The position numbers and the translations under genes were made by a program. Of a stretch of 14,415 nt of DNA, positions 1 through 14,000 are shown in pieces. How positions within the stretch are numbered: the first letter of the stretch is position 1; every line of letters begins with the position of its first letter. The notes beneath the pieces were generated by a model. It searched no databases, was not told the DNA's origin, and saw only the letters and a list, made by a program, of their open reading frames with translations. Source of the DNA: Octopus sinensis (taxonomy: Eukaryota); contig NW_021825728.1 of the NCBI RefSeq assembly GCF_006345805.1, positions 1 to 14,415 on the forward strand. The letters run 5' to 3'.

Positions 1-307
1 CCATAGATTGAGTGGAAAGATGGGTGATACGCTGGAGCCAAAGGGCAGCTGTGTTTGCGACAACAAAGTAGTCCCTTGTTTGACGTAATCCCTATATTTA
101 CAGGCTGTTCCATTATCCACCGCCTGGTAACCTACCGAATAGAAGATACTCACTCAAGATTTACACATTCACACACACATTCATAGCCATCCTTAAATCG
201 CTAGTCGAGCGAGTATGTCTTGGCAACATATCTAAAGCTTTTACTAATTGCTTCAGGTGCCTATGTATTTCCGAGCAGACATAGATAGACTTTTAGCGGT
301 AATACAT

Positions 308-358
308 CCGAAAGGATGAAAGGTAAAGTCAACTTCGGCGGAATTTGAAGTCAGAACG
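308..358 (-). mobile_element. Truncated fragment of an octopus-type tRNA-derived SINE
   Basis: CCGAAAGGATGAAAGGTAAAGTCAACTTCGGCGGAATTTGAAGTCAGAACG. The minus strand reads cgttctgacttcaaattccgccg, a B-box-like TTCAAATTCC. Family recognised from memory of octopus repeats, not from a search. Confidence 0.6.
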
Positions 359-1104
359 ATTAATGCAATATAATACAAATCCTTTAATCTGAAATAATAC
401 TCAGGAAGAGTCGAACCCACTCTGTACAATCTAGGGTACATTTCAGTTAAACTGTAACAGACAGATCAGCTAAATCTTAAGCTTAAAGTATTTTGTAGAA
501 TTATAACTAATGTCTTTTTATTTCTAAAAATGTATCGGGTTTATTTTACCAATGACGTCTTTAATAAAAATACGTTTCATAATACCGGACTATTTTACAT
601 GTTTCATTTACGTAATTTCAGAGTCAAGCAATTTAAGCGGATCTCGTAATTATCTGCAGTTTAATTAGTCTAACAATATCACTTTTAATGGTAAACGTAA
701 TATAGACATGCAATAATTAACTGTCATTCTGTTACTAAATCAGCTAATATCAATATAACTGTAACAATAAATATCTTAAATTTAGGAAATGATGTTGCGA
801 AATGCGGCTTCCGGGGCGCAGCCCAGCAAGCAAATTTTATTAAAGTGGAAGAAGTAGGCATACCCAGCCGGATTATTTGCGTAATGTGGTTCTTCGTTGT
901 CAGGTTCATTTCGACTCCTCACATGGCATCATTACACCGATGTCTTCGTTCACAAATCCACACTGTATGCAGTTCTTCTTCGTCTGACCTCACACTAACT
1001 GTTCACATCACCCAACTCTCATCTCTAACTCTTCACATCGCCCAACTCTTATCCGATTTTTAATTACCCACAAGGGTCTAACATAGAGGGACAATAAACA
1101 TATG

Positions 1105-1535
1105 AAAGAACAGAAGAGTAGTAAGAAGAGAAGAGGAAGGAGAAGGAGGAGAAGAAGACGAAGAAGAAGAAGAAGGAAAATGAGGAAGAGCAGGACGATA
1201 GGATGTGGAAGAAGAGAAAGAAAAACAAGAATGGTAGGACAAGAACAACATCAAATCAACAACATTAAAACAATAAGTAGAGGAAGTAGAAGAAAAAGAA
1301 AACGGAGACGAAGAATATGTAGAAGGAGATAATAACTAATATGATGAAAGGAAGGAAACGAAAATGACGAAAAGAAGAAGAAGAAAAAGAGGAGGAGTAA
1401 GAAGAAGAAGAGCAAGGAAGTGCAGGAGGAGGTAATGAAGATGAAGTGGATGTAGAAGTTAAAGAAGAAGAGAGAGAGGTGAAAAATAAGTAGGAGGAGA
1501 AAAGAAGAAGAAAGGAAGAAGAATATGTCCAAGAA
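1105..1535. repeat. Purine-rich (GAA/GAG) low-complexity tract, unit 1
   Basis: Almost all A/G on the + strand; homologous to 5710-6130 and 10713-11192. Confidence 0.9.
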
Positions 1536-1851
1536 GAATTTTATAAATGAGTTTTATAAATGACGTAGTTCTAAATGTACAAATGCCATCGGTATTGAAG
1601 CATGTTATTTAGCGTAAACACCAGACATAATATCCATACCGAATGATAGACACAGGTGAATAGGGATTTGTATGTTTATAGTGATGATGAACATGGTGTT
1701 GATGCTGATGATGATGGTGGTGAAGTTTCTCTTGTCGATGATGATGAACATATAATACCGTGTGAAAGGAAAATGACGAGAGTGAGCGAAATTACAAACA
1801 TGGAAATATATCGGCAATGATATACTATAAGTGAAGATTGATTTAACTTAC

Positions 1852-1923
1852 AGCTCATATAAATTGGTCAAATATTGGAAGGTTTCTGGTTGGATTTCAG
1901 TAAAATTATTACCGCCAAAACTC
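1852..1923 (-). CDS. Internal 72-nt exon encoding one typical LRR: (L)SFGGNNFTEIQPETFQYLTNLYE(L)
   Basis: Minus strand: tctatattgcag|G AGT TTT GGC GGT AAT AAT TTT ACT GAA ATC CAA CCA GAA ACC TTC CAA TAT TTG ACC AAT TTA TAT GAG CT|gtaagt. It has a canonical acceptor, a perfect GTAAGT donor, phase 2 at both ends and no stop, and it fits LxxLxLxxNxLxxLPxxxFxxLxx. Confidence 0.8.
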
Positions 1924-2263
1924 CTGCAATATAGAATTGAGTTAATTTCAAACTTTATGGAACAGGCAAGTGGCAGTACATAACATATTTCGAGTAAGGA
2001 AATAAACTATGGAAATCACGAAGAGTTGATTACGGTTCCGTTGAAATTGATAATAACGATGATGATGATGTTCAAGTGGGTGCAACTAACTGCGGTAGGA
2101 TATGGTAATGAATAAAGTTGGTGATAAAGCTAACTTATTGCGGTAGTGTGTGGTAATGAATGAAGTTAATGATAAAGGTAATGATGAGCCTGAAAATATT
2201 GAAAACTGAGAGAAAGAAAAGTGTTGCGGATAATAATGTCGGTAATGATGATGGGAACGAAGA

Positions 2264-2947
2264 AATTGATAATGAATGAGAAGTAAATGAAAATCGGTAA
2301 GAAGGAGAATAAGAAAAAGTAGAAGAAAAATATGAAGATGACGAAAAAGCAGACGAAATGGAATATAAATAAGAGCGATTAGAAATGAAGAACGACGAAG
2401 AAGAAGAAAAAGAAGAAAAAGTAGAGCAGGAAGATACGAAGTGGAAGAAAGAAAGAAAAAGAAGACAATTAGCACAAAATCAACAACATTAAAAACAATA
2501 ATTAGAGGAAGTAGAAGAAGTAAACGGAGAGAAAGAATATGCAGATGGAGAAGATAACTAAAATGATGAAACGAAGAAAAGGAAAATGATGAAAAGAAGA
2601 AGAAGACGATGACAGATGCAAAGTAGAAGATAAAAAAATAGAAATGAATAAGAGTGGAAAAAATATGAGTGTGAAGATAGTGCAAAAGAAAAATTAGAAG
2701 AAGAAGAAGAAGAAGAAGAAGAAGAAGAATAAGAAGAAAGAAGAAGAAGAAGAAAAGAGGAAGAAGAAAAAGAAGAAAAAGAGAAAAAGAAGAAGAAGGA
2801 AAAGAAGAAGAACAAGAAGAAGAACAAGAAGAAGAAGAAGTAAAAAAAATAATAAGAAGAAGAAGAACAAGTAGAGGAAGAAAAAGAAGAAGAACCAGAA
2901 GAAGAAGAGGAGGCAGAAGAAGAAAAGAAGAACAAAAACAAGGAGGA
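2264..2947. repeat. Purine-rich low-complexity tract including a perfect (GAA)11 at 2697-2729 and an older diverged copy of the unit purine block at about 2390-2605
   Basis: Direct reading. Motifs AGAGCAGGA (2423) and AATCAACAACATTAAAA (2478) also occur at 1187 and 1254. Confidence 0.85.
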
Positions 2948-2984: not shown

Positions 2985-4895
2985 GTTTGGGCCACAACCG
3001 ATTGTGCCCTTTGACTATCCCCGCCAGAATCGATGCCTGATGAAGAAATAATTATAGTTATAATTATTTGCATTATTCGTTAGTTTCATAAAATCTATGT
3101 TAGCTAAGTCTAAAAGCGTTAGCGGTAATACATTTCGGAAACTATACAGAAGTCCCTTTGTCTAGCTTCGTATCTTTGTCATCATTGGCTAATTGATGAC
3201 TTTCTCACTGAGACTGTCATATTGTTTCCCACGGCTTTGCCTGTAACCATAGATTGAGGGGAAGATGGGTGATACGCTGAGCCAAAGGGCAGCTGTGTTT
3301 GCGCCAACAAAGTAGTCCCATATTTGACGTAATCCCTATATTTACATGCTGTTCCATTATCCACCGCCTTGTAACCTACCGAATAGAAGATACTCACTCA
3401 AGATTTACACATTCGCACACACATTCATAGCCATCCTTAAATCGCGAGTGGAGCGAGTATGTCTTGGCAACATATCTAAAGCTTTTACTAATTGCTTCAG
3501 GTGCCTATGTATTTCCGAGCAGACATAGATAGATTTTTATATCTCCGACCCTAACCCTAACCCAGCTGTCGCTTCTAACACTTGACTGGTACACATTTAC
3601 AGCTGGGTAGACTGGATAAATCCTGAAGAACTTCCCAAACACCTTGCTCACTTAAAGAAATGAACCAATCACATTATGATCGTGCAGCGACATGCTAATC
3701 ACTGTATCACATCTTTCACACATACTGAGGTACTACAAGTAGAAACCGATACCAACAGCTCAAATGCAGCCCATAGCAAGTTTCCCCTGTCATCAACAAT
3801 TCACTGGATCCACGCTCAAATCATATCCAGTGATATGGTAGTTTTATCGGTCAAAACACCGGATTTAATCTATTGGCTGAAGCTAAAATCACAGAGATAG
3901 GAACTGATTGCAGAAAATGATAGAATATCATAAATGTCTGACAAGAAATTCAAAGTTATCTCTTGAATAAAGTCCAACATCCTTTCACACAAAAACATCT
4001 AAACATCTAAGGATTCTGGCAGCCATAATGGATTCTCATCTCTTTTGATCCTGAAGGAAGTCACTTTTGAAGTAGAACATCACTATAGGAGAAAGTAGAT
4101 CCCGTGTATATCTAGGACTGAATTTAAAAGACAATTTTTTTTCTTTTTAGAACCAGAAAATATTTCAATCCTAACAACTCCCACTTTTTGACGCTCAAGT
4201 AACCAAAGTAAGACCACTCTTTTTATTAACATTCCTTCAGTAATATTAACCGCTATGTTTAGTTCTTCATCCTCAGAACATCGGATTCTGGAATGTCCTC
4301 CATGTTCTCGTCTTCTTTCCGGTGGGAATTTATCTGTAACAATTTAAACGGAGCATTACCATCATCACCCCCACCAATATCGCACAACCAGCGACATTAA
4401 TGAGCTCAACTCCTTCTTCAAAACGCAGAAAGTAAAAGCAAGTGGGATTTGAACTTAAAATGGAAAGAGCTAGAAAATGTCCATACGAGACCCAGTCCGA
4501 TATCCCTACACTTTGTCTAGTCCACTGGCCTCTTTAAGTACGCAAAAAGCCGTAAGATAAGGATGTCCTCGGCTAGATTTAAAGTTAGAATACCGAATGC
4601 CAGATTAAATACCACAAGGTGTCATTCAAGTCGATGAGCTGCAGGTTCGGTCAATTTTTGACTAAATTATGATTTAAAATTTCTAAATAGTATATATCGT
4701 ATATTCACCATCTGCATATATACCGATTTCTATTTTATTCAGACAATCCCAAATGTGTAGAGAAGCAAGTGAATTCGCTTGAATCGATCGAATATAGTAT
4801 TGGAATATTTTATTTAAACTGGAAACTTCAAGTATTTAATGCCATATAACTTTTTCTACTGTAGGCAAAATACCAGATATTTTGGTGTAAGGAGA

Positions 4896-4994
4896 GTCGA
4901 TTAGATCGACCCTAGTATGCAACTGTTAATTAATTTATAGACCCCGAAAGGATGAAGGGCAAAGTCGACTTCGGCGGAATTTGAAGTAAGAACG
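4896..4994 (-). mobile_element. Fragment of an octopus-type tRNA-derived SINE
   Basis: GTCGATTAGATCGACCCTAGTATGCAACTG...GACCCCGAAAGGATGAAGGGCAAAGTCGACTTCGGCGGAATTTGAAGTAAGAACG, with a GTCGA-n5-TCGAC hairpin and a B-box-like motif on the minus strand. Recognised from memory of octopus repeats. Confidence 0.65.
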
Positions 4995-5709
4995 ATTAAT
5001 GCAATATAACACAAATCCTTTAATCTGAAATAATACTCAGGAAGAGTCGAACCCACTCTGTGCAATCTAGGGTACTTTTCAGTTGAACTGTAACAGAGAG
5101 ATCAGCTAAATCTTAAGCTTAAAGAAATTTGTAGAATTATAACTAATGTGTTTTTATATCTAAAAGTTATCGGGTTTATGATATCAACCTAAATTTTACC
5201 GATGACGTCTTTAATAAAAATAAGTTTCATAATACCGGACTATTTTACATGTTTCATTTACGTAATTTCATAGTCAGGCAATTTAAGAGAATCTCGTAAT
5301 TATCTGCAGTTTAATTAGTCTAACAATATCACTTTTAATTGTAAACGTAATATAGACATGCAATAATTAACTGTCATTCTGTTACTAAATCAGGGGGGGG
5401 GGGCGCGCCCAGCAAGCCAAATTGATTAAAGTGGAAGAAGTAGGCATACCCAGCCGGATTATTTGCGTAATGTGGTTCTTCGTTGCCAGGTTCATTTCGA
5501 CTCCTCACATGGCATCATTACACCGATGTCTTCGTTAACAAATCCACACCGTATGCAGTTCTTCGTCGTCTGACCTCACACCAACTATTCACATCACCCA
5601 CCTCTCATCTCTAACTCTTCCCATCGCCCAACGCTTATCGGATTTTTAATTACCCACAAGGGTCTAACATAGAGGGACAATACGCATAATTTGGGGACAA
5701 TTAACATAT

Positions 5710-6130
5710 GAAAAAACAGAAGAAGAAGTAGAAAAAGAAGAAGAAGAAGAAGAAGAAGAAGAAGAAGAAGAAGGAAAATGAGGAAGAGCAGGACGATAAG
5801 ATGTAGAAGAAGAGAAAGAAAAACAAGAATGGTAGGACAAAAACAACATCAAATCAACAACATTAAAACAATACGTAGAGGAAGTAGAAGAAGAAAACGG
5901 AGACGAAGAATATGTAGAAGGAGATAATAACTAATATGATGAAATGAAGGAAACGAAGATGACGAAAAGAAGACGAAGAAAAAGAGGAGGAGTAAGAAGG
6001 AGAATAGCAAGGAAGAGGTGGAGGAGGTAATGAAGATGAAGTGGAAGTAGAGGTTAAAGAAGAAGCGAAAGAGGTGAAGAATAAGTAGGAGAAGAAAAGA
6101 AGAAGAAAGGAACAAGAATAAGTCCAAGAA
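5710..6130. repeat. Purine-rich tract of unit 2, with a perfect (GAA)12 at 5737-5772
   Basis: Direct reading; homologous to 1105-1535. Confidence 0.9.
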
Positions 6131-6446
6131 GAATTTTATAAATGAATTTTATAAATGACGTAGTTCTAAATGTACAAATGCCATCGGTATTGAAGCATGT
6201 TATTTGGCGTAAACACCAGACATAATATCCATACCGAATGATAGACACAGGTGAATAGGGATTTGTATGTTTATAGTGATGATGAACATGGTGTTGATGC
6301 TGATGATGTTGGTGGTGAAGTTTCTCTTGTCGATGATGATGAACATACAATACCGTGTGAAAGGAAAATGACGAGAGTGAGCGAAATTACAAACATGGAA
6401 ATATATCGTCAATGATATACTATAAATGAAGATTGATTTAACTTAC

Positions 6447-6518
6447 AGACTTTTTAAATTGGTCAAATATTGGAAGGTTTCTGGTTTGATTTCAGTGAGA
6501 TTATTACCCCACAATTCC
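6447..6518 (-). CDS. Internal 72-nt exon encoding one typical LRR: (L)ELWGNNLTEIKPETFQYLTNLKS(L)
   Basis: Minus strand: ttttatgttccag|G GAA TTG TGG GGT AAT AAT CTC ACT GAA ATC AAA CCA GAA ACC TTC CAA TAT TTG ACC AAT TTA AAA AGT CT|gtaagt. Splice sites are canonical, phase is 2/2, and it splices in frame to 1852-1923 giving ...LTNLKSLSFGGNNFTEIQP... Confidence 0.85.
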
Positions 6519-6843
6519 CTGGAACATAAAATTGATTTAAGATGAAACTTTATGGAACATGTTTTTGGAAGTATAAACAAAAAAACGAGTGAGGAATTAA
6601 ACTATGGAAATCATGAAGAGTTGATTACGGTTCTGTTGAAATTGATAATAACGATGATGATGATGTTCAAGTGGGTGCAACTAACTGCGGTTGTCTATGG
6701 TAATGAATAAAGTTGATGATGAACCTGACAATGTTGACAGCTGAGAGAAAGAATAGTGTTGCGGAGAATAGTCTCGGTAATGATGATGGGAACGAAGAAT
6801 GTTTCGGGGACCACTACCCTGGGATGATCATGAAGCAAGCAAG

Positions 6844-7132
6844 CGTGTGTTTGTGCACGGACGTGTGTATGTAAGCATGTGTGTATGTATGTGTTTCTGT
6901 AAGCGTGTGTGTGTTAACTCAATAGTTGAACATGAAGAACGAAGAATATTACATCTTCATAATTTATTTGTTGAGGCATTTTCTTCATATTACATTCATT
7001 GGTTAATCAGCCCAAGATTTCCTCAGGGTGCTAAAAAGTATCTGCTCGGATTTCAAATCCCTATTTCATTACGTTACATATGTGTATGTGTGTGGCTGTG
7101 TGTACATATATGTATGTAAATGCCTATGTATA
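6844..7132. repeat. Two imperfect (TG/TATG)n stretches (about 6844-6915 and 7076-7132)
   Basis: gcgtgtgtttgtgcacggacgtgtgtatgt... and atatgtgtatgtgtgtggctgtgtgtacatatatgtatg. Confidence 0.75.
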
Positions 7133-7134
7133 TA

Positions 7135-8029
7135 CGAGGGGATACACAGAAGTAACCGTAAATGTTCTCTGTAAAACAAACCCGTTGTAGTTCAGGTTTC
7201 CATCGCTAAACTCCACTTGATGCGACTGTCAGGCATCAGTCAGCCAACCGGCGTTATCCGGTAGTGTTGTACTGCCGCGTAGTTCGTCTTTGTTTTGACG
7301 TATTTCTGCTCAGTTCGTATGTTTTTTGCAATGGCTGGAACGAAGGAACATTGTGCTTCTGTGAAATTCTGTTTACTGCTGCTGAAAACTGCAGATGAAA
7401 CAATTGTCATGCATCCCATCACAAGGATGATGCAATGGACAAAGCACAAGTTTATGAATGGTTTTCACGATTTAGCAATGGTCACTTGTCGCGTGAAAAC
7501 CAACCTCATTCATGACAACCATCAATCAACCACCCAAACATCATGAAAATTAATGATCTGATCCTTCAGGACCGTCACTGAGCATTTGATGAAATTGTTG
7601 AAATGTCGATTTTGTCCTGGAGCTCCTGCCAATGAATTTTCTGCGAGGAATTGTGAATGAAAAGCGTTCCAGCAAAATATATGCCTCGTTTGCTCACGTA
7701 ATGTCATAAATAGTCACGGCTGAATGCGTGTCGTGAGCTAGAAGAAGGGTTATGAGGTAATCCGAAAGTTTTTTCGAAGGTCTTCACTGGTGACGAAAGC
7801 TGGTACTACGGAATTTGAAGATGTTGAAGTAAGGAAAGAAATCGATGGGGGCGTTAAAAAGCATCACTTCGGAATAGGTCCAACACGGATTCCAGTAGCT
7901 GAAAAGGCGACTGGAACGATGCATTGATTAAAATGGAGAATACTTTGAACACAATAAAAGTGTAAATATGTAAATCTTATTGAATAATATAATATTGCAA
8001 AATTACTGTTTCTTTTGGGCAGCCCCTCG
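7135..8029 (+). mobile_element. Defective, internally deleted mariner (Tc1/mariner) element with both TIRs
   Basis: The left end is TA|CGAGGGGATACACAGAAGTAACCGTAA. The reverse complement of the right end is CGAGGGGCTGCCCAAAAGAAACAGTAA (21/27 identical). The left flank is TA; the right flank is AA (mutated TSD). A transposase remnant lies inside. Confidence 0.9.
7331..7973 (+). pseudogene. Mariner transposase pseudogene
   Basis: With frameshifts and stops it reads MAGTKEHCASVKFCLLLLKTADETIVM / KDDAMDKAQVYEWFSRFSNGHLSRENQPHS*QPS...MKSVPAKYMPRLLT...KVFTGDESWYYG / FEDVEV / ALKSITSE*VQHGFQ*LKRRLERCID*NGEYFE. This shows the N-terminal HTH region, the linker, the first catalytic Asp (TGDESW) and the C-terminal CIxxxGEYFE motif. 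The second and third catalytic Asp region is deleted at about 7812. Confidence 0.9.
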
Positions 8030-10712
8030 AATGTATGTACACACAAGCGGCTAAGGCCGAGCTTCCCTGGGATTATTAATACCTAAAATAGATATTATCT
8101 CATCATTTCCTTATATTTTGGGTAAACTGTTTTATAAAAGATGCCAAGATACCGGAAATCCTCAGTTTGTCTGTGAATGTTAATTCACTGAGAATTGTAA
8201 ATACACAGAACATAAGAAAAAAAACTAAAATACAGTTTACCTTTATATTCATATTTTCTGTGGTAAATGTTTTAAGAACATACGCTACATTTTTCAAAAT
8301 ATCTTCAAAGTAATTTCTTTTCTAATAAGTAAATTTTACAATGACTAACGTAGTGCTTGAAGTATACAATGTTCTTATTTCGCCCTTGGTTGCAGACAAG
8401 TGGTGAAGATCCCACACTGGATATTTAGAATGTCGTCTGGCAAGCTAAGACTTCATAGATTTTATCTTACAGAATATGGCTTATTGTACTCTGTACCTTA
8501 TATATCTTCACCTTTGCAACTATACTCCACATAAGGTATTTTACGCCCACAACCCTTTCATTACTAGATTTATTTTGATTGAGAACTGATGTTAGGCTTG
8601 CTAATCATCATCTCGTAGGGAAGATTTGATAATTGTGTTGTTATCACTTTTCATTAGTGAATTCATGAGTTGTTTTGTCTTTGCTGGTCCATTTCGTTAA
8701 ACCTAGTTTTATTACACTTTCATGCTATTATATATATATAATTATAGACATATCGTTAAATGTCGTCACTAATTACAATAATATTTATATATATCTGATG
8801 CTACCGATTCACTTATTAATGATAATTTAGAGCTCAGGCATTCAAAGTTGATATTATTTCTGTGTGCTTGCATTTTTCTAATGATGAGTTTTAAGGTTGG
8901 CGCTGTTGATTATTCTTTTGAATTATGGGCCATATTGTGGGCCACAACCGATTGTGCCCTTTGTTTATTTCCGCAAGAATCGATGCGGGATGAAGAAATA
9001 TTTATAGTTATAAGTCATTTGCATTATTCGGTAGCTTCATAACATCTATGTTAACTAAGTCTAAAAGCGTTAGCGGTAATACACTTCGGAAACTACATAG
9101 AAGTCCCTTTGTCTAGCTTGGTATCATTGACACCATTGGACAATGAATGACTTTCTCACTGAGACTACAGCGCTGTCATATTGTAGACTGAGTGGAAGAT
9201 GGGTGATACGCTGAGCCAAAGGGCAGCAGTGTTTGCGCCAACAAAGTATTTCCTTATTTGACGTAATCCCTATATTTACAGGCTGTTCCATTGTCAACCG
9301 CCTCGTAACCTACCGAATAGTAGATTCTCACTCAAGATTTACACATTCGCACATACATATTCATAGCCATCCTTAATGCGCGAGTGGAGCGAGTATGTCT
9401 TGGCAACATATCTAATGCTTTTACTAATTGCTTCAGGTGCCTATGTATTTCCGAGCTGACATAGATACGCTTTTATATCTCCAATCCTAAACCTAACCCA
9501 GCTGTCGCATCCAATACTTGACTGGTACACATTTACAGCTGCGTAGACTGGATCAATCCCTATCAACGTCCCAAACACCGAGCTTAGTTCAAGAACTGAA
9601 TCAATCACATTATGATCGTGGAGCGACATGCTAATCACTGTGTCATATCTTTCACACACACTGAGGTACTACAAGTAGAAACTGATACCAATAGCTCAAA
9701 TGCAGCCCAAAACAATTTTCCCCTGTCATCAACAAGTCACTGGATCCACGCTCAAATCATATCCAGTGCTATGGCAGTTTTAACACTCAAAACATCTCAG
9801 CTCAGATGTAATCTACTGGCTGAGGCTAAAGTCACAGAGATGGGAAAATGATAGAATATCATAAAATGCCTGACAAGAAATTTAAAGTTGTCTCTTGAAT
9901 ATAGTCCAAAAGCTTTTCACACAAAAACATTTAAAAATCAAATGATTCTGGCAGCCATAAAGAATTCTCTTCTGTTTTCTTTTGATCCTGAAGGAAGTCA
10001 CTTTTGAAGTAGAACATCACTATAGCAGAAAGTAGATCCAGTGTATATCTAGGACGGAATTTATAAGACAATGTTTTTTTCTTTTTAGAATCAGAAAATA
10101 TTTCAATCCTAACAACTCCCACATTTTGACGCTCAAGTAACCAAAGTAAGACCACTCTTTTTATTAACATTCCTTCAGTAATATTAACCGCTATGTTTAG
10201 TTCTTCATCCTCAGAACGTCAGCTTCTGGAATGTCCTCCATGTCCTCGTCTTCTTTCCGGCGGGAATTTATCTGTAACAATTTAAACGGATCATTACCAT
10301 CATCACCCCCACCAATATCGCACAACCAGCGACATTAATGAGCACAACTCCTTCAAAACGCAGAAAGTAAAAAGAAGTGGGATTTGAACTTAAAATGGAA
10401 AGAGCTAGAAAATGTCCATACGAGACCCAGTCCCACATCCCTACCCTCTGTCTAGTCCACTGGCCTCTTCAAGTACGCAAAAAGCCGTAAGATAAGGATG
10501 TCCTCGGCTAGATTTAAAGTCATTACACCGTTGCCTTCGTTGACAAATCCACACTGTATGCAGTTCTTCGTCGTCTGACCTCACACCAACTGTTCACATC
10601 ACCCAACTCTCATCTCTAACTCTTCCCATCGCCAACTCTTATCCGATTTTTAATTACCCACAAGGGTCTAACATAGAGGGACAATACGCACATTTGGGGA
10701 CAATTAATATAT

Positions 10713-11192
10713 GAAAGAACAGAAGAAGAAGACGAAGAAGAAGAAGAAGAAGAAGAAGAAGAAGGAAAATGAGGAAGAGCAGGATGAAAAGATGTAGAAG
10801 AAGAGAAAGAAAAACAAGAATGGTAGGACAAAACCAACATCAAATCAACAACATTAACACAATAAGTAGAGGAAGTAGAAGAAGAAAATGGAGACGAAGA
10901 ATATGTAGATGGAGATAATAACTAATACGATGAAACGAAGGAAACGAAAATGACGAAAAGAAGAAGATGAAGAAAAAGATGAGGAGTAAGAAGAAGAAGA
11001 CGAAGAAAAAGAGGAGGAGTGAGAAAAAGAAGACGAAGAAAAAGAGGGGGAGTAAGAAGAAGAAGAGCAAGGAAGTGGAGGAGGAGGTAATGAAGCTGAA
11101 GTGGAAGTAGAAGTTAAAGAAGAAGAGGAAGGAGGTGAAAAATAAGTAGGAGAAGATAAGAAGAAGAAAGGAAAAAGAATTAGTACAAGAAG
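10713..11192. repeat. Purine-rich tract of unit 3, with a perfect (GAA)10 at 10734-10763
   Basis: Direct reading; homologous to 5710-6130. Confidence 0.9.
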
Positions 11193-11196
11193 ACTT

Positions 11197-11738
11197 TCGA
11201 AATGAACCTGGCAACGAAGAACCACATTACGCAAATAATCCGGCCAGGTATGCCTACTTCCTCCACTATAATCAAATTGGATTGCTGGGCTGCCCCCCGG
11301 GTACCGTAATTCGCAACATCATTTCCTAAATTTAAGATGCTTATTGTTACAGTTATATTGATATTAGCTGATTTAGTAACAGAATGACAGTTAATTATTG
11401 CATGTCTATATTACGTTTACAATTAAAAGTGATATTGTTAGACTAATTAAACTGCAGATAATTACGAGATTCTCTTAAATTGCCTGACTATGAAATTACG
11501 TAAATGAAACATGTAAAATAGTCCGGTATTATGAAACTTATTTTTATTAAAGACGTCATCGGTAATATTTAGATTGATATCATAAACCCGATACGTTTTT
11601 AGAAATAAAAACACATTAGTTATAATTCTACAAATTTCTTTAAGCTTAAGATTTAGCTGATCTGTCTGTTGCAGTTCAACTGAAAAGTACCCTAGATTGT
11701 ACAGAGTGGGTTCGACTCTTCCTGAGTATTATTTCAGA
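11197..11738 (-). repeat. Inverted copy (about 540 bp) of the block at about 389-913 and 5024-5500
   Basis: TCGAAATGAACCTGGCAACGAAG at 11197 is the reverse complement of 5478-5500. CCTGAGTATTATTTCAGA ending at 11738 is the reverse complement of 5024-5041. Confidence 0.93.
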
Positions 11739-12398
11739 AATTCTGTTTACTGCTGCTGAAAACTGCAGATGAAACAATTTTCATGCATCCAATCACAAGG
11801 ATGATGCAATGGGCAAAGCACAAGTTTATGAATGGTTTTCACGATTTAGGAGAGTCCACTTGTCGCTTGAAAACCAAGTCATTCATGACAACCGTCGACC
11901 TCCCAAACATCATGAAAATTCATGATCTGATCGTGGAGGACCGTCACTGAGCAATTGATGAACTTGTTGACATTTCGGTTTTGCCCTGGAGCTCCTGCCA
12001 ATGAATTTTCTGCGAGGAATTGTGAATGAAAAGCGTTCCAGCAAAATATATGCCTCGTTTGCTCACGGAATATCAAAAACAGTCACGGCTGAATGCGTGT
12101 CGTGAGCTAGAAGAACCGTTATGAGGTAATCCTAAAGTTTTTCCGAAGGTCATCACTGGTTTCGAAAGCTGGTGCTACGGAATTTGAAGATGTTGAAGTG
12201 AGGAAAGAAATCGATGGGGGCGTTAAAGAGCATCACTTCGGAATAGGTCCAACACTGATTCCAGCAGCTGAAAAGGCGCCTGCAACGATGCATTGATTAA
12301 AATGGAGAATACTTTGAACACAATAAAAGTGTAAATATGTAAAACTTATTGAATAATATAATATTGCAAAATTACTGTTTCTTTTGGGCAGCCCCTCG
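11737..12398 (+). mobile_element. 5'-truncated duplicate of the defective mariner (right TIR only)
   Basis: Starts at GAAATTCTGTTTACTGC (equivalent to 7363). It reads VITGFESWCYG, has the same internal deletion and shared stop codons, and ends in CTTTTGGGCAGCCCCTCG. Confidence 0.9.
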
Positions 12399-13355
12399 AA
12401 TGTATGTACACACAAGCGGCTAAGGCCGAGCTTCCCTGGGATTATTAATACCTAAAATAGATATTATCTCATCATTTCCTTATTTTTTGGGTAAACTGTT
12501 GTTTAAAAGATGCCAAGATACCGAAAATCCTCAGTTTGTCTGTGAATGTTAATTCACTGAGAATTGTAAATACACAGAACATAAGAAAATACTAAAATAC
12601 ACTTTACTTTTATATTTATATTTTCTGTGGTAAATGTTTTAAGAACATACGCTACATTTTTCAAAATATCTTCAAAGTAATTTCTTTTCTAATAAGTAAA
12701 TTTTACAATGACTAACGTAGTGCTTGAAGTATACAATGTTCTTATTTCGCCCTTGGTTGCAGACAAGTGGTGAAGATCCCACACTGGATATTTAGAATGT
12801 CGGCTGGCAAGCTAAAACTTCATAGTGTTTATCTTACAGAATATGGCTTATTGTACTCTGTACCTTATATATCTTCACCTTTGCAACTATACTCCACATA
12901 ACAAGGTGTTCTACACCCACAACCCTTTAATTACTAGAATTATTTTGATTGTGAAATGATGTTAGGCCTGCTAATCATCATCTCGTGGGAAGATTTGATA
13001 ATTGTGTTTTTATCACTTTTCATTACTGAATTCATGAGTTGTCTTTCTTTATTGGTCCATTTCGTTATACCTAGTTTTATTACGCTTTCATGCTGTTATA
13101 TATCTATAATTATAGACATATCGTTATATGTCGTCACTAATTACAATAATAATTATATATAACTGATGCTAACGTTTCACATATTAACGAATATTTGGAG
13201 CTCAGGCATTCACACTTGATATTATTTCTGTGTAATTGCATTTTTGTAATGATGAGCTATAAGGTTGGCGCTGTTAGTCATTCTTTTGAATGATGGGCCA
13301 TAGTTTGGGCCACACCGATTGAGCCCTTTGTTTTTTCCCGCAAGAATCGATGTAT

Positions 13356-13941: not shown

Positions 13942-14000
<59 letters not shown>
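13942..14000. repeat. Perfect (AG)29 microsatellite
   Basis: Direct reading. Confidence 0.98.

What the first reader, a model, noticed from the sequence alone, without database searches (positions are those of the whole stretch)
1852..2010. Sharply bounded divergent patch: the exon plus about 85 nt of acceptor-side intron, inside near-identical flanks
Seen: 1924-2008 vs 6519-6602 (non-coding) differ at roughly a quarter of positions. The next about 88 nt differ at only 2, and the about 315 nt on the other side of the exon differ at about 6. Selection on protein cannot explain intronic divergence. Inference: either the exon and its acceptor came in as a cassette by gene conversion from another LRR paralog, or the introns are homogenised while this patch is protected. 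Either way this suggests cassette-like exchange of LRR modules.
Basis: partly seen in the sequence, partly recalled or inferred. Interest (0 to 1): 0.7.

Follow-up and report, generated by a model that had tools for sequence, protein, structure and literature searches.

The report
Divergent island in duplicated LRR exons
Two neighbouring copies of a 72-base leucine-rich-repeat exon sit in almost identical duplicated DNA, but a stretch of about 100-155 bases (part of the exon plus the intron just upstream) differs strongly; this is the known kind of patchwork that gene conversion leaves between tandem duplicates, and it is real but fairly ordinary.

Summary
Units b1 (300-2264) and b2 (4936-6799) differ at about 5% overall and at 2% in the 400 nt flanking the patch. 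They differ at 14/72 exon positions and 20/84 acceptor-side intron positions. The maximum-likelihood island is 1902-2002 (28% against 5.1%), with LLR 25 against at most 10.7 in 300 permutations. Both exons (1852-1923 and 6447-6518, minus strand) are intact 72-nt LRR exons with AG/GT sites and phase-2 introns. All 14 exon differences change amino acids, mostly on the ligand-facing xxLxLxx positions.

The window holds three copies of a 4.6-5.9 kb unit, and their genealogies disagree between blocks, so exchange between units does happen here. Shorter, weaker divergence spikes also occur in non-coding parts.

Best reading: the patch is an island of older ancestry inside a tandem array that non-allelic gene conversion is homogenising. 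It was either shielded from homogenisation (about 0.4) or imported from a third unit (about 0.3). These cannot be told apart because no third copy of the patch is in the window and every external search came back empty. Nothing supports programmed, VLR-like cassette exchange.

The parts
1852..1923 (-). LRR exon 1: 72 nt, with phase-2 introns on both sides (the split codon is CT|G). It encodes (L)SFGGNNFTEIQPETFQYLTNLYE(L).
   Evidence: Sequence read: acceptor ...ttgcag|G and donor CT|gtaagt. Pfam LRR_8 gives E 1.6e-12 and 47.4 bits (cutoff 27) on the two exon peptides joined together.
6447..6518 (-). LRR exon 2: 72 nt, same phase. It encodes (L)ELWGNNLTEIKPETFQYLTNLKS(L).
   Evidence: acceptor ...gttccag|G and donor CT|gtaagt. 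It differs from exon 1 at 14/72 nt, all within 7 changed codons, with no synonymous-only change.
1924..2008 (-). Divergent acceptor-side intron of exon 1 (branch point, pyrimidine tract and acceptor region). The densest block of differences is at 1965-1990.
   Evidence: 20/84 mismatches against 6519-6602. The maximum-likelihood island is 1902-2002. No significant RNA structure on either strand.
6519..6602 (-). Divergent acceptor-side intron of exon 2.
1541..1851 (-). Near-identical donor-side intron flank, paired with 6136-6446.
   Evidence: 6/311 mismatches. Together with 2009-2096 this gives 8/399 = 2.0%, against 5.8% in the rest of the unit; Fisher p = 0.0013.
2009..2096 (-). Near-identical flank on the far side of the divergent intron stretch, paired with 6603-6690.
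   Evidence: 2/88 mismatches.
300..2264 (.). Repeat block b1, the exon-bearing part of unit 1. It is homologous to b2.
   Evidence: 1828 aligned columns, 6.1% mismatches including the patch.
4936..6799 (.). Repeat block b2, the exon-bearing part of unit 2.
10520..11735 (.). Rearranged third copy of block b. Positions 10520-11197 are direct (equivalent to b 929-1545) and 11198-11735 are inverted (equivalent to b 905-308). The exon region is missing.
   Evidence: The inverted part differs from b2 at 2.7% and from b1 at 5.9%.

Best explanation
The window is part of a tandem array of units 4.6-5.9 kb long in an AT-rich, repeat-rich eukaryotic genome. Each intact unit carries one 72-nt LRR exon of a minus-strand gene. 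Non-allelic gene conversion and unequal exchange keep the units similar to each other.

The patch is an island of older ancestry that this homogenisation has not erased. Conversion tracts coming from the donor-side intron stop at the mismatch cluster in the last two variable codons (1854-1859). Tracts coming from the other side stop at the mismatch-dense block at 1965-1990. Everything between those two points is shielded, including about 40 nt of neutral intron next to the acceptor.

The shielding has two inferred causes. One is selection against copies in which the ligand-facing LRR residues have been overwritten. The other is the known failure of heteroduplex extension across densely mismatched DNA.

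Shown here: the island itself, the intact LRR exons, the amino-acid pattern of the differences, the unusually similar near flanks, and the discordant genealogies along the unit. Inferred: that the flanks, rather than the patch, are the exchanged part, and that selection and mismatch barriers are the cause.
For: 1. The island is real and highly significant.
2. The 400 nt directly abutting it are less diverged (2.0%) than the rest of the same unit (5.8%; Fisher p = 0.0013). This is expected if recent homogenising tracts ran up to the island. A simple import into the patch does not predict it.
3. Exchange among units is visible in the window. In block a, unit 3 is the odd one out (18/7/4 sites). 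In b 440-690, unit 1 is the odd one out. In b 925-1550 the pattern is star-like. The a-versus-bL contingency test gives p = 0.006.
4. Divergence between units is patchy in general, with stretches of 0-2% next to stretches of 11-15%.
5. The island covers the only coding sequence in the unit. All 14 exon differences are non-synonymous. Four of the 7 changed residues fall on the five solvent-exposed x positions of xxLxLxx (hypergeometric p = 0.014; LRR positions taken from textbook LRR structure).
6. The left edge lies within 22 nt of the last differing codons.
7. Published theory and cases describe exactly this signature: PMC3924837 (peak of divergence, opsin exon 5), PMC3728101 (islands of divergence, and mismatch clusters that block conversion), and 10.1101/2025.10.29.685298 (mosaic divergence in tandem paralogues).
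Against: 1. This reading needs kilobase-scale homogenisation on both sides, so several events, whereas a single 100-155-bp import would do.
2. The maximum-likelihood island is centred on the intron, not on the changed codons.
3. The 17 unchanged codons show 0 differences at about 11 synonymous sites. That is awkward if the island is old (P = 0.05 at 24% divergence, 0.17 at 15%).
4. The low divergence of the near flanks rests on only 8 mismatches, and purifying selection on intronic splicing signals could also produce it.
5. There is no outgroup copy of the patch and no orthologue, so the direction of exchange is untested.
6. Similar, weaker spikes occur in non-coding blocks where no selection is evident.
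Confidence: 0.4

Rival explanations
1. Import. Units 1 and 2 are recent whole-unit duplicates, about 5% diverged. In one of them, a short non-allelic gene-conversion tract of about 100-155 bp copied the 5' part of the exon and its acceptor-side intron from a third, older LRR-exon unit lying outside the window.
For: - It needs the fewest events, and the tract length is typical for animal gene conversion (my own knowledge).
- Similarity between the units extends over more than 2 kb and includes low-complexity and repeat sequence.
- Several codons differ at 2-3 positions (AGT/GAA, GAG/AGT, TAT/AAA). That is hard to reach by point mutation within the time implied by 5% divergence.
- The array has at least 3 units, and the window edge cuts through a unit, so further donors are plausible.
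- Short spikes in non-coding blocks look like neutral imports from other repeat copies.
Against: - No donor is present in the window; each patch's best in-window match is the other patch, at 78%.
- It does not predict the unusually low divergence of the immediate flanks.
- The separate cluster at 1854-1859, beyond the identical 32-nt core, needs either a donor with an identical core or a second event.
- It shares the problem of zero synonymous differences.
Confidence: 0.32
2. Local complex mutation without an outside template. A few multi-nucleotide events in one copy after a recent duplication would account for the differences: small replacement indels, compensated 1-nt frameshifts, or template switching at a quasi-palindrome.
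For: - The gapped alignment explains both exon ends as pairs of 1-nt indels plus 2 substitutions each, rather than 5-6 substitutions.
- The block at 1965-1990 is about 50% mismatched, which makes it effectively a small replacement.
- Copy 2 carries a GTTTTT...AAAAAC quasi-palindrome there.
- There are no synonymous differences in the unchanged codons.
Against: - At least 5-6 independent complex events would have to fall within 150 nt of a 1.9-kb unit.
- The differences between the clusters (1924-1964, 7/41) look like ordinary substitutions.
- No nearby direct or inverted template was found for either version.
Confidence: 0.1
3. Divergence driven by splicing. The two exons would be alternative or mutually exclusive, and their acceptor regions would have diverged under selection for different regulation.
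For: The divergent intron stretch is exactly the branch-point, pyrimidine-tract and acceptor region. The exons have equal length and phase.
Against: - A 72-nt symmetric exon keeps the reading frame whether one or both copies are included, so nothing enforces exclusivity.
- No docking/selector-type complementarity and no significant RNA structure was found.
- The donor sites and donor-side introns are identical.
Confidence: 0.05
4. Assembly or consensus artefact. A repeat array that was mis-assembled or mis-polished could give a chimeric patch.
For: The region is highly repetitive. An 11-G run at 5393-5403 replaces about 63 nt that are present in the other copies, which could be a technical artefact.
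Against: Both versions of the patch keep an open 72-nt frame, canonical splice sites and the LRR consensus residues. Random error would not do this.
Confidence: 0.05
5. Programmed exchange of LRR cassettes, somatic or germline, in the manner of VLR assembly.
For: Only the general resemblance: tandem LRR modules with a variable ligand face.
Against: - The modules are ordinary exons with AG/GT splice sites inside 3-6 kb repeat-filled introns.
- One unit has lost its exon through rearrangement.
- The mosaic pattern also affects non-coding blocks.
- No donor cassette is present.
Confidence: 0.02

Closest known systems
Peak or island of divergence between paralogs under interlocus gene conversion (Innan / Teshima model). 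The classic case is exon 5 of the primate red and green opsin genes. See also the Tigriopus GOT1 paralogs and the A. halleri HMA4 tandem copies.
   Same: Tandem paralogous sequences have very similar introns and flanks and a narrow, sharply elevated divergence peak over a functionally relevant exon. There is evidence of exchange elsewhere in the duplicates (PMC3924837, PMC3728101, 10.1101/2025.10.29.685298).
   Different: Here the paralogous units are duplicated exons with their introns inside one gene, not whole genes. The peak's maximum lies in the acceptor-side intron. No orthologue comparison is available to prove concerted evolution.
Genes with one LRR per exon. Examples are the gonadotrophin and glycoprotein-hormone receptors (LGR type) with phase-2 introns, and the brown-alga ROCO genes with shuffled 72-bp LRR exons.
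   Same: A 72-nt exon encodes one 24-residue LRR. Both flanking introns have the same phase (phase 2 by the standard definition). The exons are tandemly duplicated, and the variable residues lie on the beta-strand face (PMC11378527).
   Different: The rest of the gene is outside the window. No homologous protein was found, so the family (LGR, Slit-like, LRR-only or other) is unknown. The genome is an AT-rich animal-like one, not a brown alga.
Diversification of LRRs in plant resistance-gene clusters by sequence exchange combined with diversifying selection on xxLxLxx residues.
   Same: Amino-acid differences are concentrated on solvent-exposed LRR positions, against a background of sequence exchange among tandem copies (PMC3924837 cites this for NBS-LRR genes).
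   Different: In plants the exchange is between whole genes, and there is no one-LRR-per-exon structure. An immune role is not shown here.
Assembly of lamprey and hagfish VLR genes from LRR cassettes.
   Same: Only that LRR modules lie in tandem and vary on the ligand face.
   Different: VLR cassettes are not spliced exons and are copied somatically into an incomplete gene (my own knowledge). Here the modules are ordinary exons, and no sign of programmed copying was found.

Membership tests
Leucine-rich repeat (Pfam LRR_8 / LRR_1) | A profile match above the curated cutoff, with the LxxLxLxxNxLxxIxxxxFxxL consensus. | tested here: met
   LRR_8 gives E 1.6e-12 and 47.4 bits against a cutoff of 27. 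LRR_1 gives 30.2 bits against 20.6. The consensus L/F, N, I and F positions are kept in both exons.
One-LRR-per-exon gene architecture (gonadotrophin-receptor / LGR type; brown-alga ROCO type) | Exons of about 72 nt, each encoding one repeat, flanked by introns of the same phase. | tested here: met
   Both exons are 72 nt with AG|...|GT sites, and the codon is split CT|G at both ends (phase 2). Compared with PMC11378527.
One-LRR-per-exon gene architecture (gonadotrophin-receptor / LGR type; brown-alga ROCO type) | The remaining domains that define the family (7TM for LGR, ROC-COR for ROCO). | not testable with these tools
   No other exon of the gene lies in the window. No homologous protein or related contig was found.
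Island of divergence under interlocus gene conversion | A narrow divergence peak inside paralogous sequence that is otherwise highly similar. | tested here: met
   28% against 5.1%; LLR 25.2 against a permutation maximum of 10.7.
Island of divergence under interlocus gene conversion | Independent evidence that the paralogs exchange sequence. | tested here: met
   The three-copy site patterns change topology between adjacent blocks (a against bL, p = 0.006). The near flanks are less diverged than the rest of the unit (p = 0.0013). This is evidence for the array as a whole, not for the patch borders specifically.
Island of divergence under interlocus gene conversion | The peak is centred on sites where selection maintains a functional difference. 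| tested here: inconclusive
   The exon differences are all non-synonymous and enriched on xxLxLxx positions (p = 0.014). However, the likelihood maximum lies in the intron, and no functional data exist.
Island of divergence under interlocus gene conversion | Paralogs within a species are more alike in the flanks than orthologues are between species (concerted evolution). | not testable with these tools
VLR-type somatic LRR cassette system | Cassettes are non-spliced partial LRR segments that flank an incomplete germline gene. | tested here: not met
   Both modules are complete 72-nt exons with canonical acceptor and donor sites, inside introns several kilobases long.
Mutually exclusive exon cluster (Dscam type) | Docking and selector RNA complementarity in the introns next to the variable exons. 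| tested here: not met
   There is no significant inverted match of either acceptor-side patch anywhere in the window. Fold z-scores range from -1.25 to +0.49.

The most novel reading that the evidence does not exclude
The array could be a germline store of LRR-exon variants in an invertebrate-type genome. Short templated copying between units (exon plus acceptor) would then be used, in evolution or somatically, to generate receptor diversity. That would be an animal counterpart of the exon shuffling proposed for brown-alga ROCO genes, or a spliced-exon analogue of VLR assembly.
Probability: 0.03. Interest if true: 0.8.

Novelty: new member of a known kind. Interest (0 to 1): 0.3.

Why it matters
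If the island is shielded older divergence, it marks the residues of this LRR protein that selection keeps distinct, namely positions 2, 3, 5 and 7 of the repeat. It would also be a clean small example of how a tandem exon array can be homogenised in its introns while adjacent repeats stay different. If the island is an import, it documents short-tract exchange of the ligand-facing half of an LRR between repeats. Either way it illustrates a known process rather than a new mechanism. Its practical value is as a pointer to a rapidly evolving, unannotated LRR gene.

Tried and rejected
1. Search for a third copy or donor of the patch inside the window. I used blastn-short with word size 7 on both strands, with the patches, introns and exons as separate queries. 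Only the reciprocal match appeared (78%); everything else had E above 0.05.

2. Search for further LRR exons in all six frames using LRR regular expressions. Only the two known exons were found.

3. Protein search with the two exon peptides joined (49 aa). No hit, and only 1 candidate shared any word.

4. Protein search with a 647-aa composite of all stop-free six-frame segments around both exons, hoping to catch ORFs called on paralogous units or on other assemblies of the same genome. Nothing at E <= 0.01.

5. Metagenome scans, one with a degenerate back-translation of the conserved exon core and one with a 25-mer repeated three times in the window. Both returned 0 matches.

6. Exact-product look-ups of two window ORFs. 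Neither is on record.

A single exon is below the 30-aa minimum and would only have hit generic LRRs, so I dropped this route.

8. Rfam and tRNA scans of the window found nothing. RNA folding of the divergent intron on both strands showed no significant structure, so I rejected the idea of a structured RNA or a docking site.

9. I rejected independent insertion of the same transposon on both sides of each exon, because the flanks abut the patch collinearly on both sides in both units.

10. My first likelihood scan timed out. I reran it in vectorised form.

Full report
**What the window is.** The 14.4-kb window is 36% G+C and is full of GAA-rich low-complexity tracts, microsatellites and dispersed-repeat debris. 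It looks like eukaryotic, animal-type intron DNA. Repeat finding and pairwise alignment resolve it into three tandem copies of a composite unit.
- Unit 1: block a 1-295, block b 300-2290, a GAA-rich block to 2985, block e 2985-3245.
- Unit 2: a 3246-3539, c 3539-4940, b 4944-6800, a unique stretch 6800-7360, d 7363-8940, e 8940-9185.
- Unit 3: a 9185-9473, c 9473-10519, a rearranged b (10520-11197 direct, 11198-11735 inverted), d 11737-13305, and the beginning of e.

Blocks c and d are absent from unit 1.

**The exons.** Block b carries a 72-nt open segment on the minus strand in units 1 and 2. Exon 1 is 1852-1923 and exon 2 is 6447-6518. Both have a canonical acceptor (ttgcag|G and gttccag|G) and the same strong donor (CT|gtaagt). 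A codon is split CT|G at both ends, so both flanking introns are phase 2.

The peptides are (L)SFGGNNFTEIQPETFQYLTNLYE(L) and (L)ELWGNNLTEIKPETFQYLTNLKS(L). Joined together they match Pfam LRR_8 at E 1.6e-12 (47.4 bits, cutoff 27). Each exon therefore encodes one 24-residue LRR. This is the architecture known from gonadotrophin and LGR-type receptors and from brown-alga ROCO genes (PMC11378527). No other LRR exon is present in any frame. Unit 3 has lost the exon region through an inversion and deletion.

**Checking the observation.**
- Acceptor-side intron, 1924-2008 against 6519-6602: 20/84 mismatches (24%).
- The following 88 nt: 2/88.
- Donor-side 311 nt: 6/311.
- Exons compared without gaps: 14/72.

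A two-breakpoint likelihood scan over the 1819 aligned columns of block b places the island at 1902-2002, at 28% against 5.1% outside. Support intervals are 1846-1914 for the left edge and 1990-2009 for the right. The LLR is 25.2, against a maximum of 10.7 in 300 permutations. In non-overlapping 50-column windows outside the patch, the b1-b2 mismatch counts are close to Poisson (mean 2.45, variance 3.0, maximum 6).

The island has internal structure:
- 5 of 6 nt differ at 1854-1859, the last two full codons;
- 32 nt are identical at 1860-1891;
- differences are scattered over 1892-1964;
- a block of about 26 nt at 1965-1990 is about half mismatched;
- the remaining stretch to about 2002 is sparse.

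**Controls.**
(i) Neither patch has any other relative in the window on either strand; the reciprocal match at 78% is the only significant hit.
(ii) Other paralogous pairs (a, c, d, e, and b against the third copy) also show patchy divergence. Stretches of 0-2% lie beside spikes of 17-23% over 46-64 columns, for example 3606-3665, 3833-3888, 7476-7532 and 8784-8847. None is as long or as strong as the exon patch, and none has flanks as clean.
(iii) The 399 nt that abut the island are significantly less diverged than the rest of block b: 8/399 against 73/1264, Fisher p = 0.0013.
(iv) Where three copies exist, the odd-one-out pattern changes along the unit. Unit 3 is the odd one in block a (18/7/4 sites), unit 1 is the odd one in b 440-690, and b 925-1550 is star-like. 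The a-versus-bL test gives p = 0.006. Different segments of the unit therefore have different genealogies, which means sequence has been exchanged among units.

**What the differences look like.** All 14 exon differences fall in 7 codons, and all change the amino acid: S/E, F/L, G/W, F/L, Q/K, Y/K and E/S. The other 17 codons, with about 11 synonymous sites, are identical.

Mapped onto the LRR register L1xxL4xL6xxN9xL11xxI14xxxxF19xxL22xx, four of the seven changes lie on positions 2, 3, 5 and 7. These are solvent-exposed x positions of the xxLxLxx beta-strand (textbook LRR structure). The hypergeometric p is 0.014. Two further changes are conservative L/F swaps in the core.

The gapped alignment offers another reading of both exon ends, as compensated 1-nt indel pairs. 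The divergent intron stretch shows no significant RNA structure on either strand (z from -1.25 to +0.49). It also has no complementary partner elsewhere in the window.

**Interpretation.** Point mutation since a recent duplication cannot produce 22% divergence over 150 nt inside 2-5% flanks. The patch therefore has a different ancestry from its surroundings, and the array demonstrably exchanges sequence. Two versions of this reading remain.

Version A is the shielded island. The units have been homogenised repeatedly. Tracts stop at the mismatch-dense clusters (1854-1859 and 1965-1990). Convertants that overwrite the ligand-facing residues are removed by selection. The intron between the barriers is shielded as a by-product. 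This is the published 'peak of divergence' signature (PMC3924837; PMC3728101, which also notes that small clusters of differences strongly reduce conversion; 10.1101/2025.10.29.685298). It accounts for the very similar near flanks, the edge lying hard against the last variable codons, and the coincidence of the island with the only coding sequence.

Version B is import. After a recent whole-unit duplication, a single short tract was copied in from a third unit outside the window. This needs fewer events and a typical tract length, and it explains the codons that differ at several positions. It does not predict the very low divergence of the near flanks, and it needs a donor with an identical exon core.

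Both versions are mildly strained by the absence of synonymous differences (P = 0.05-0.17). I put A at about 0.40 and B at about 0.32. The remainder goes to local complex mutation (0.10), splicing-driven divergence (0.05), assembly artefact (0.05) and programmed cassette exchange (0.02).

**Why it cannot be settled here.** The decisive data are the other units of the array and the orthologous loci. Every route to them was empty:
- two protein searches, including a six-frame composite of the exon surroundings;
- two metagenome scans;
- two exact-ORF look-ups.

The other collections on offer hold only phage, plasmid, bacterial or archaeal sequence. The gene family beyond 'LRR' and the organism remain unknown.

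**Verdict.** However, its premise that selection cannot account for intronic divergence is wrong when gene conversion is acting, and its 'cassette-like exchange of LRR modules' conclusion is not supported. This is a good example of a known phenomenon (mosaic divergence among tandem duplicates) in an unannotated LRR gene, and its interest is modest.

Noticed in passing
window 10520-11735: The third copy of block b is rearranged. Positions 10520-11197 match b 929-1545 in direct orientation. Positions 11198-11735 are the reverse complement of b about 905-308 (2.7% from unit 2, 5.9% from unit 1). The exon region and everything up to block d is missing, so unit 3 has lost its LRR exon.
   Followed up: partly
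window 5393-5403: In unit 2 a run of 11 G replaces about 63 nt that are present in unit 1 (744-806) and in the inverted third copy. It could be a real deletion at a G-rich site or a sequencing or assembly artefact.
   Followed up: no
window 7320-8040 and 11740-12410: Block d begins with a decayed, internally deleted mariner-like relic containing many stop codons. The only profile support is a weak HTH_48 (Mos1 transposase HTH) match at E 5.6e-4, below the curated cutoff.
   Followed up: partly
window 3606-3665 vs 9542-9601; 3833-3888 vs 9769-9831; 7476-7532 vs 11850-11901; 8784-8847 vs 13152-13215: There are secondary short divergence spikes (17-23% over 46-64 columns) between units 2 and 3 in apparently non-coding sequence. 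They lie next to stretches of 100-150 nt with 0 mismatches (for example 8012-8112 and 8264-8414). The mosaic pattern is array-wide.
   Followed up: partly
window 3539-4940 and 7363-8940 (blocks c and d): Blocks c and d are present in units 2 and 3 but absent from unit 1. If they are insertions, units 2 and 3 are sisters, and the similarity of units 1 and 2 in blocks a and b must come from later exchange. If they are deletions in unit 1, that argument fails. The unit-1 a/b junction (288-304, ttagcggtaatacatccgaaag) resembles a motif in block e (3119-3140, 9070-9090).
   Followed up: no
window 2121-2180: A 60-nt segment in unit 1 is absent from unit 2. It looks like a local tandem duplication of the preceding ...ctgcggtag..tggtaatgaat.aagtt..tgataaag... 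motif.
   Followed up: no
window 2290-2700: An older partial copy of the GAA-rich part of block b lies downstream of exon 1 in unit 1; 2492-2609 matches 1270-1387 at 79% and the other copies at 85-86%. This hints at an earlier round of duplication with a period of about 1.2 kb. No exon remnant follows it.
   Followed up: no
window 1852-1860 / 1911-1924 vs 6447-6455 / 6506-6519: Both ends of the exon can be aligned as pairs of compensating 1-nt indels instead of runs of substitutions. A frame shift over 2-3 codons followed by restoration could be how the variable LRR residues changed.
   Followed up: no
window 3546-3563 and 9483-9497; 13942-14000; 2690-2960: A short telomere-like (CCCTAA) motif of about 2.5 copies lies at the a/c junction, intact in unit 2 and degenerate in unit 3. 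There is also a long (GA)n microsatellite and a (GAA)n-rich tract of about 270 nt.
   Followed up: no
window 2989-3014, 8939-8964, 13310-13335: The motif GGGCCACAACCGATTGTGCCCTTTG occurs three times at the start of block e (the third copy is slightly diverged). It may be a repeat-element terminus. There is no exact match in the metagenome collection.
   Followed up: partly
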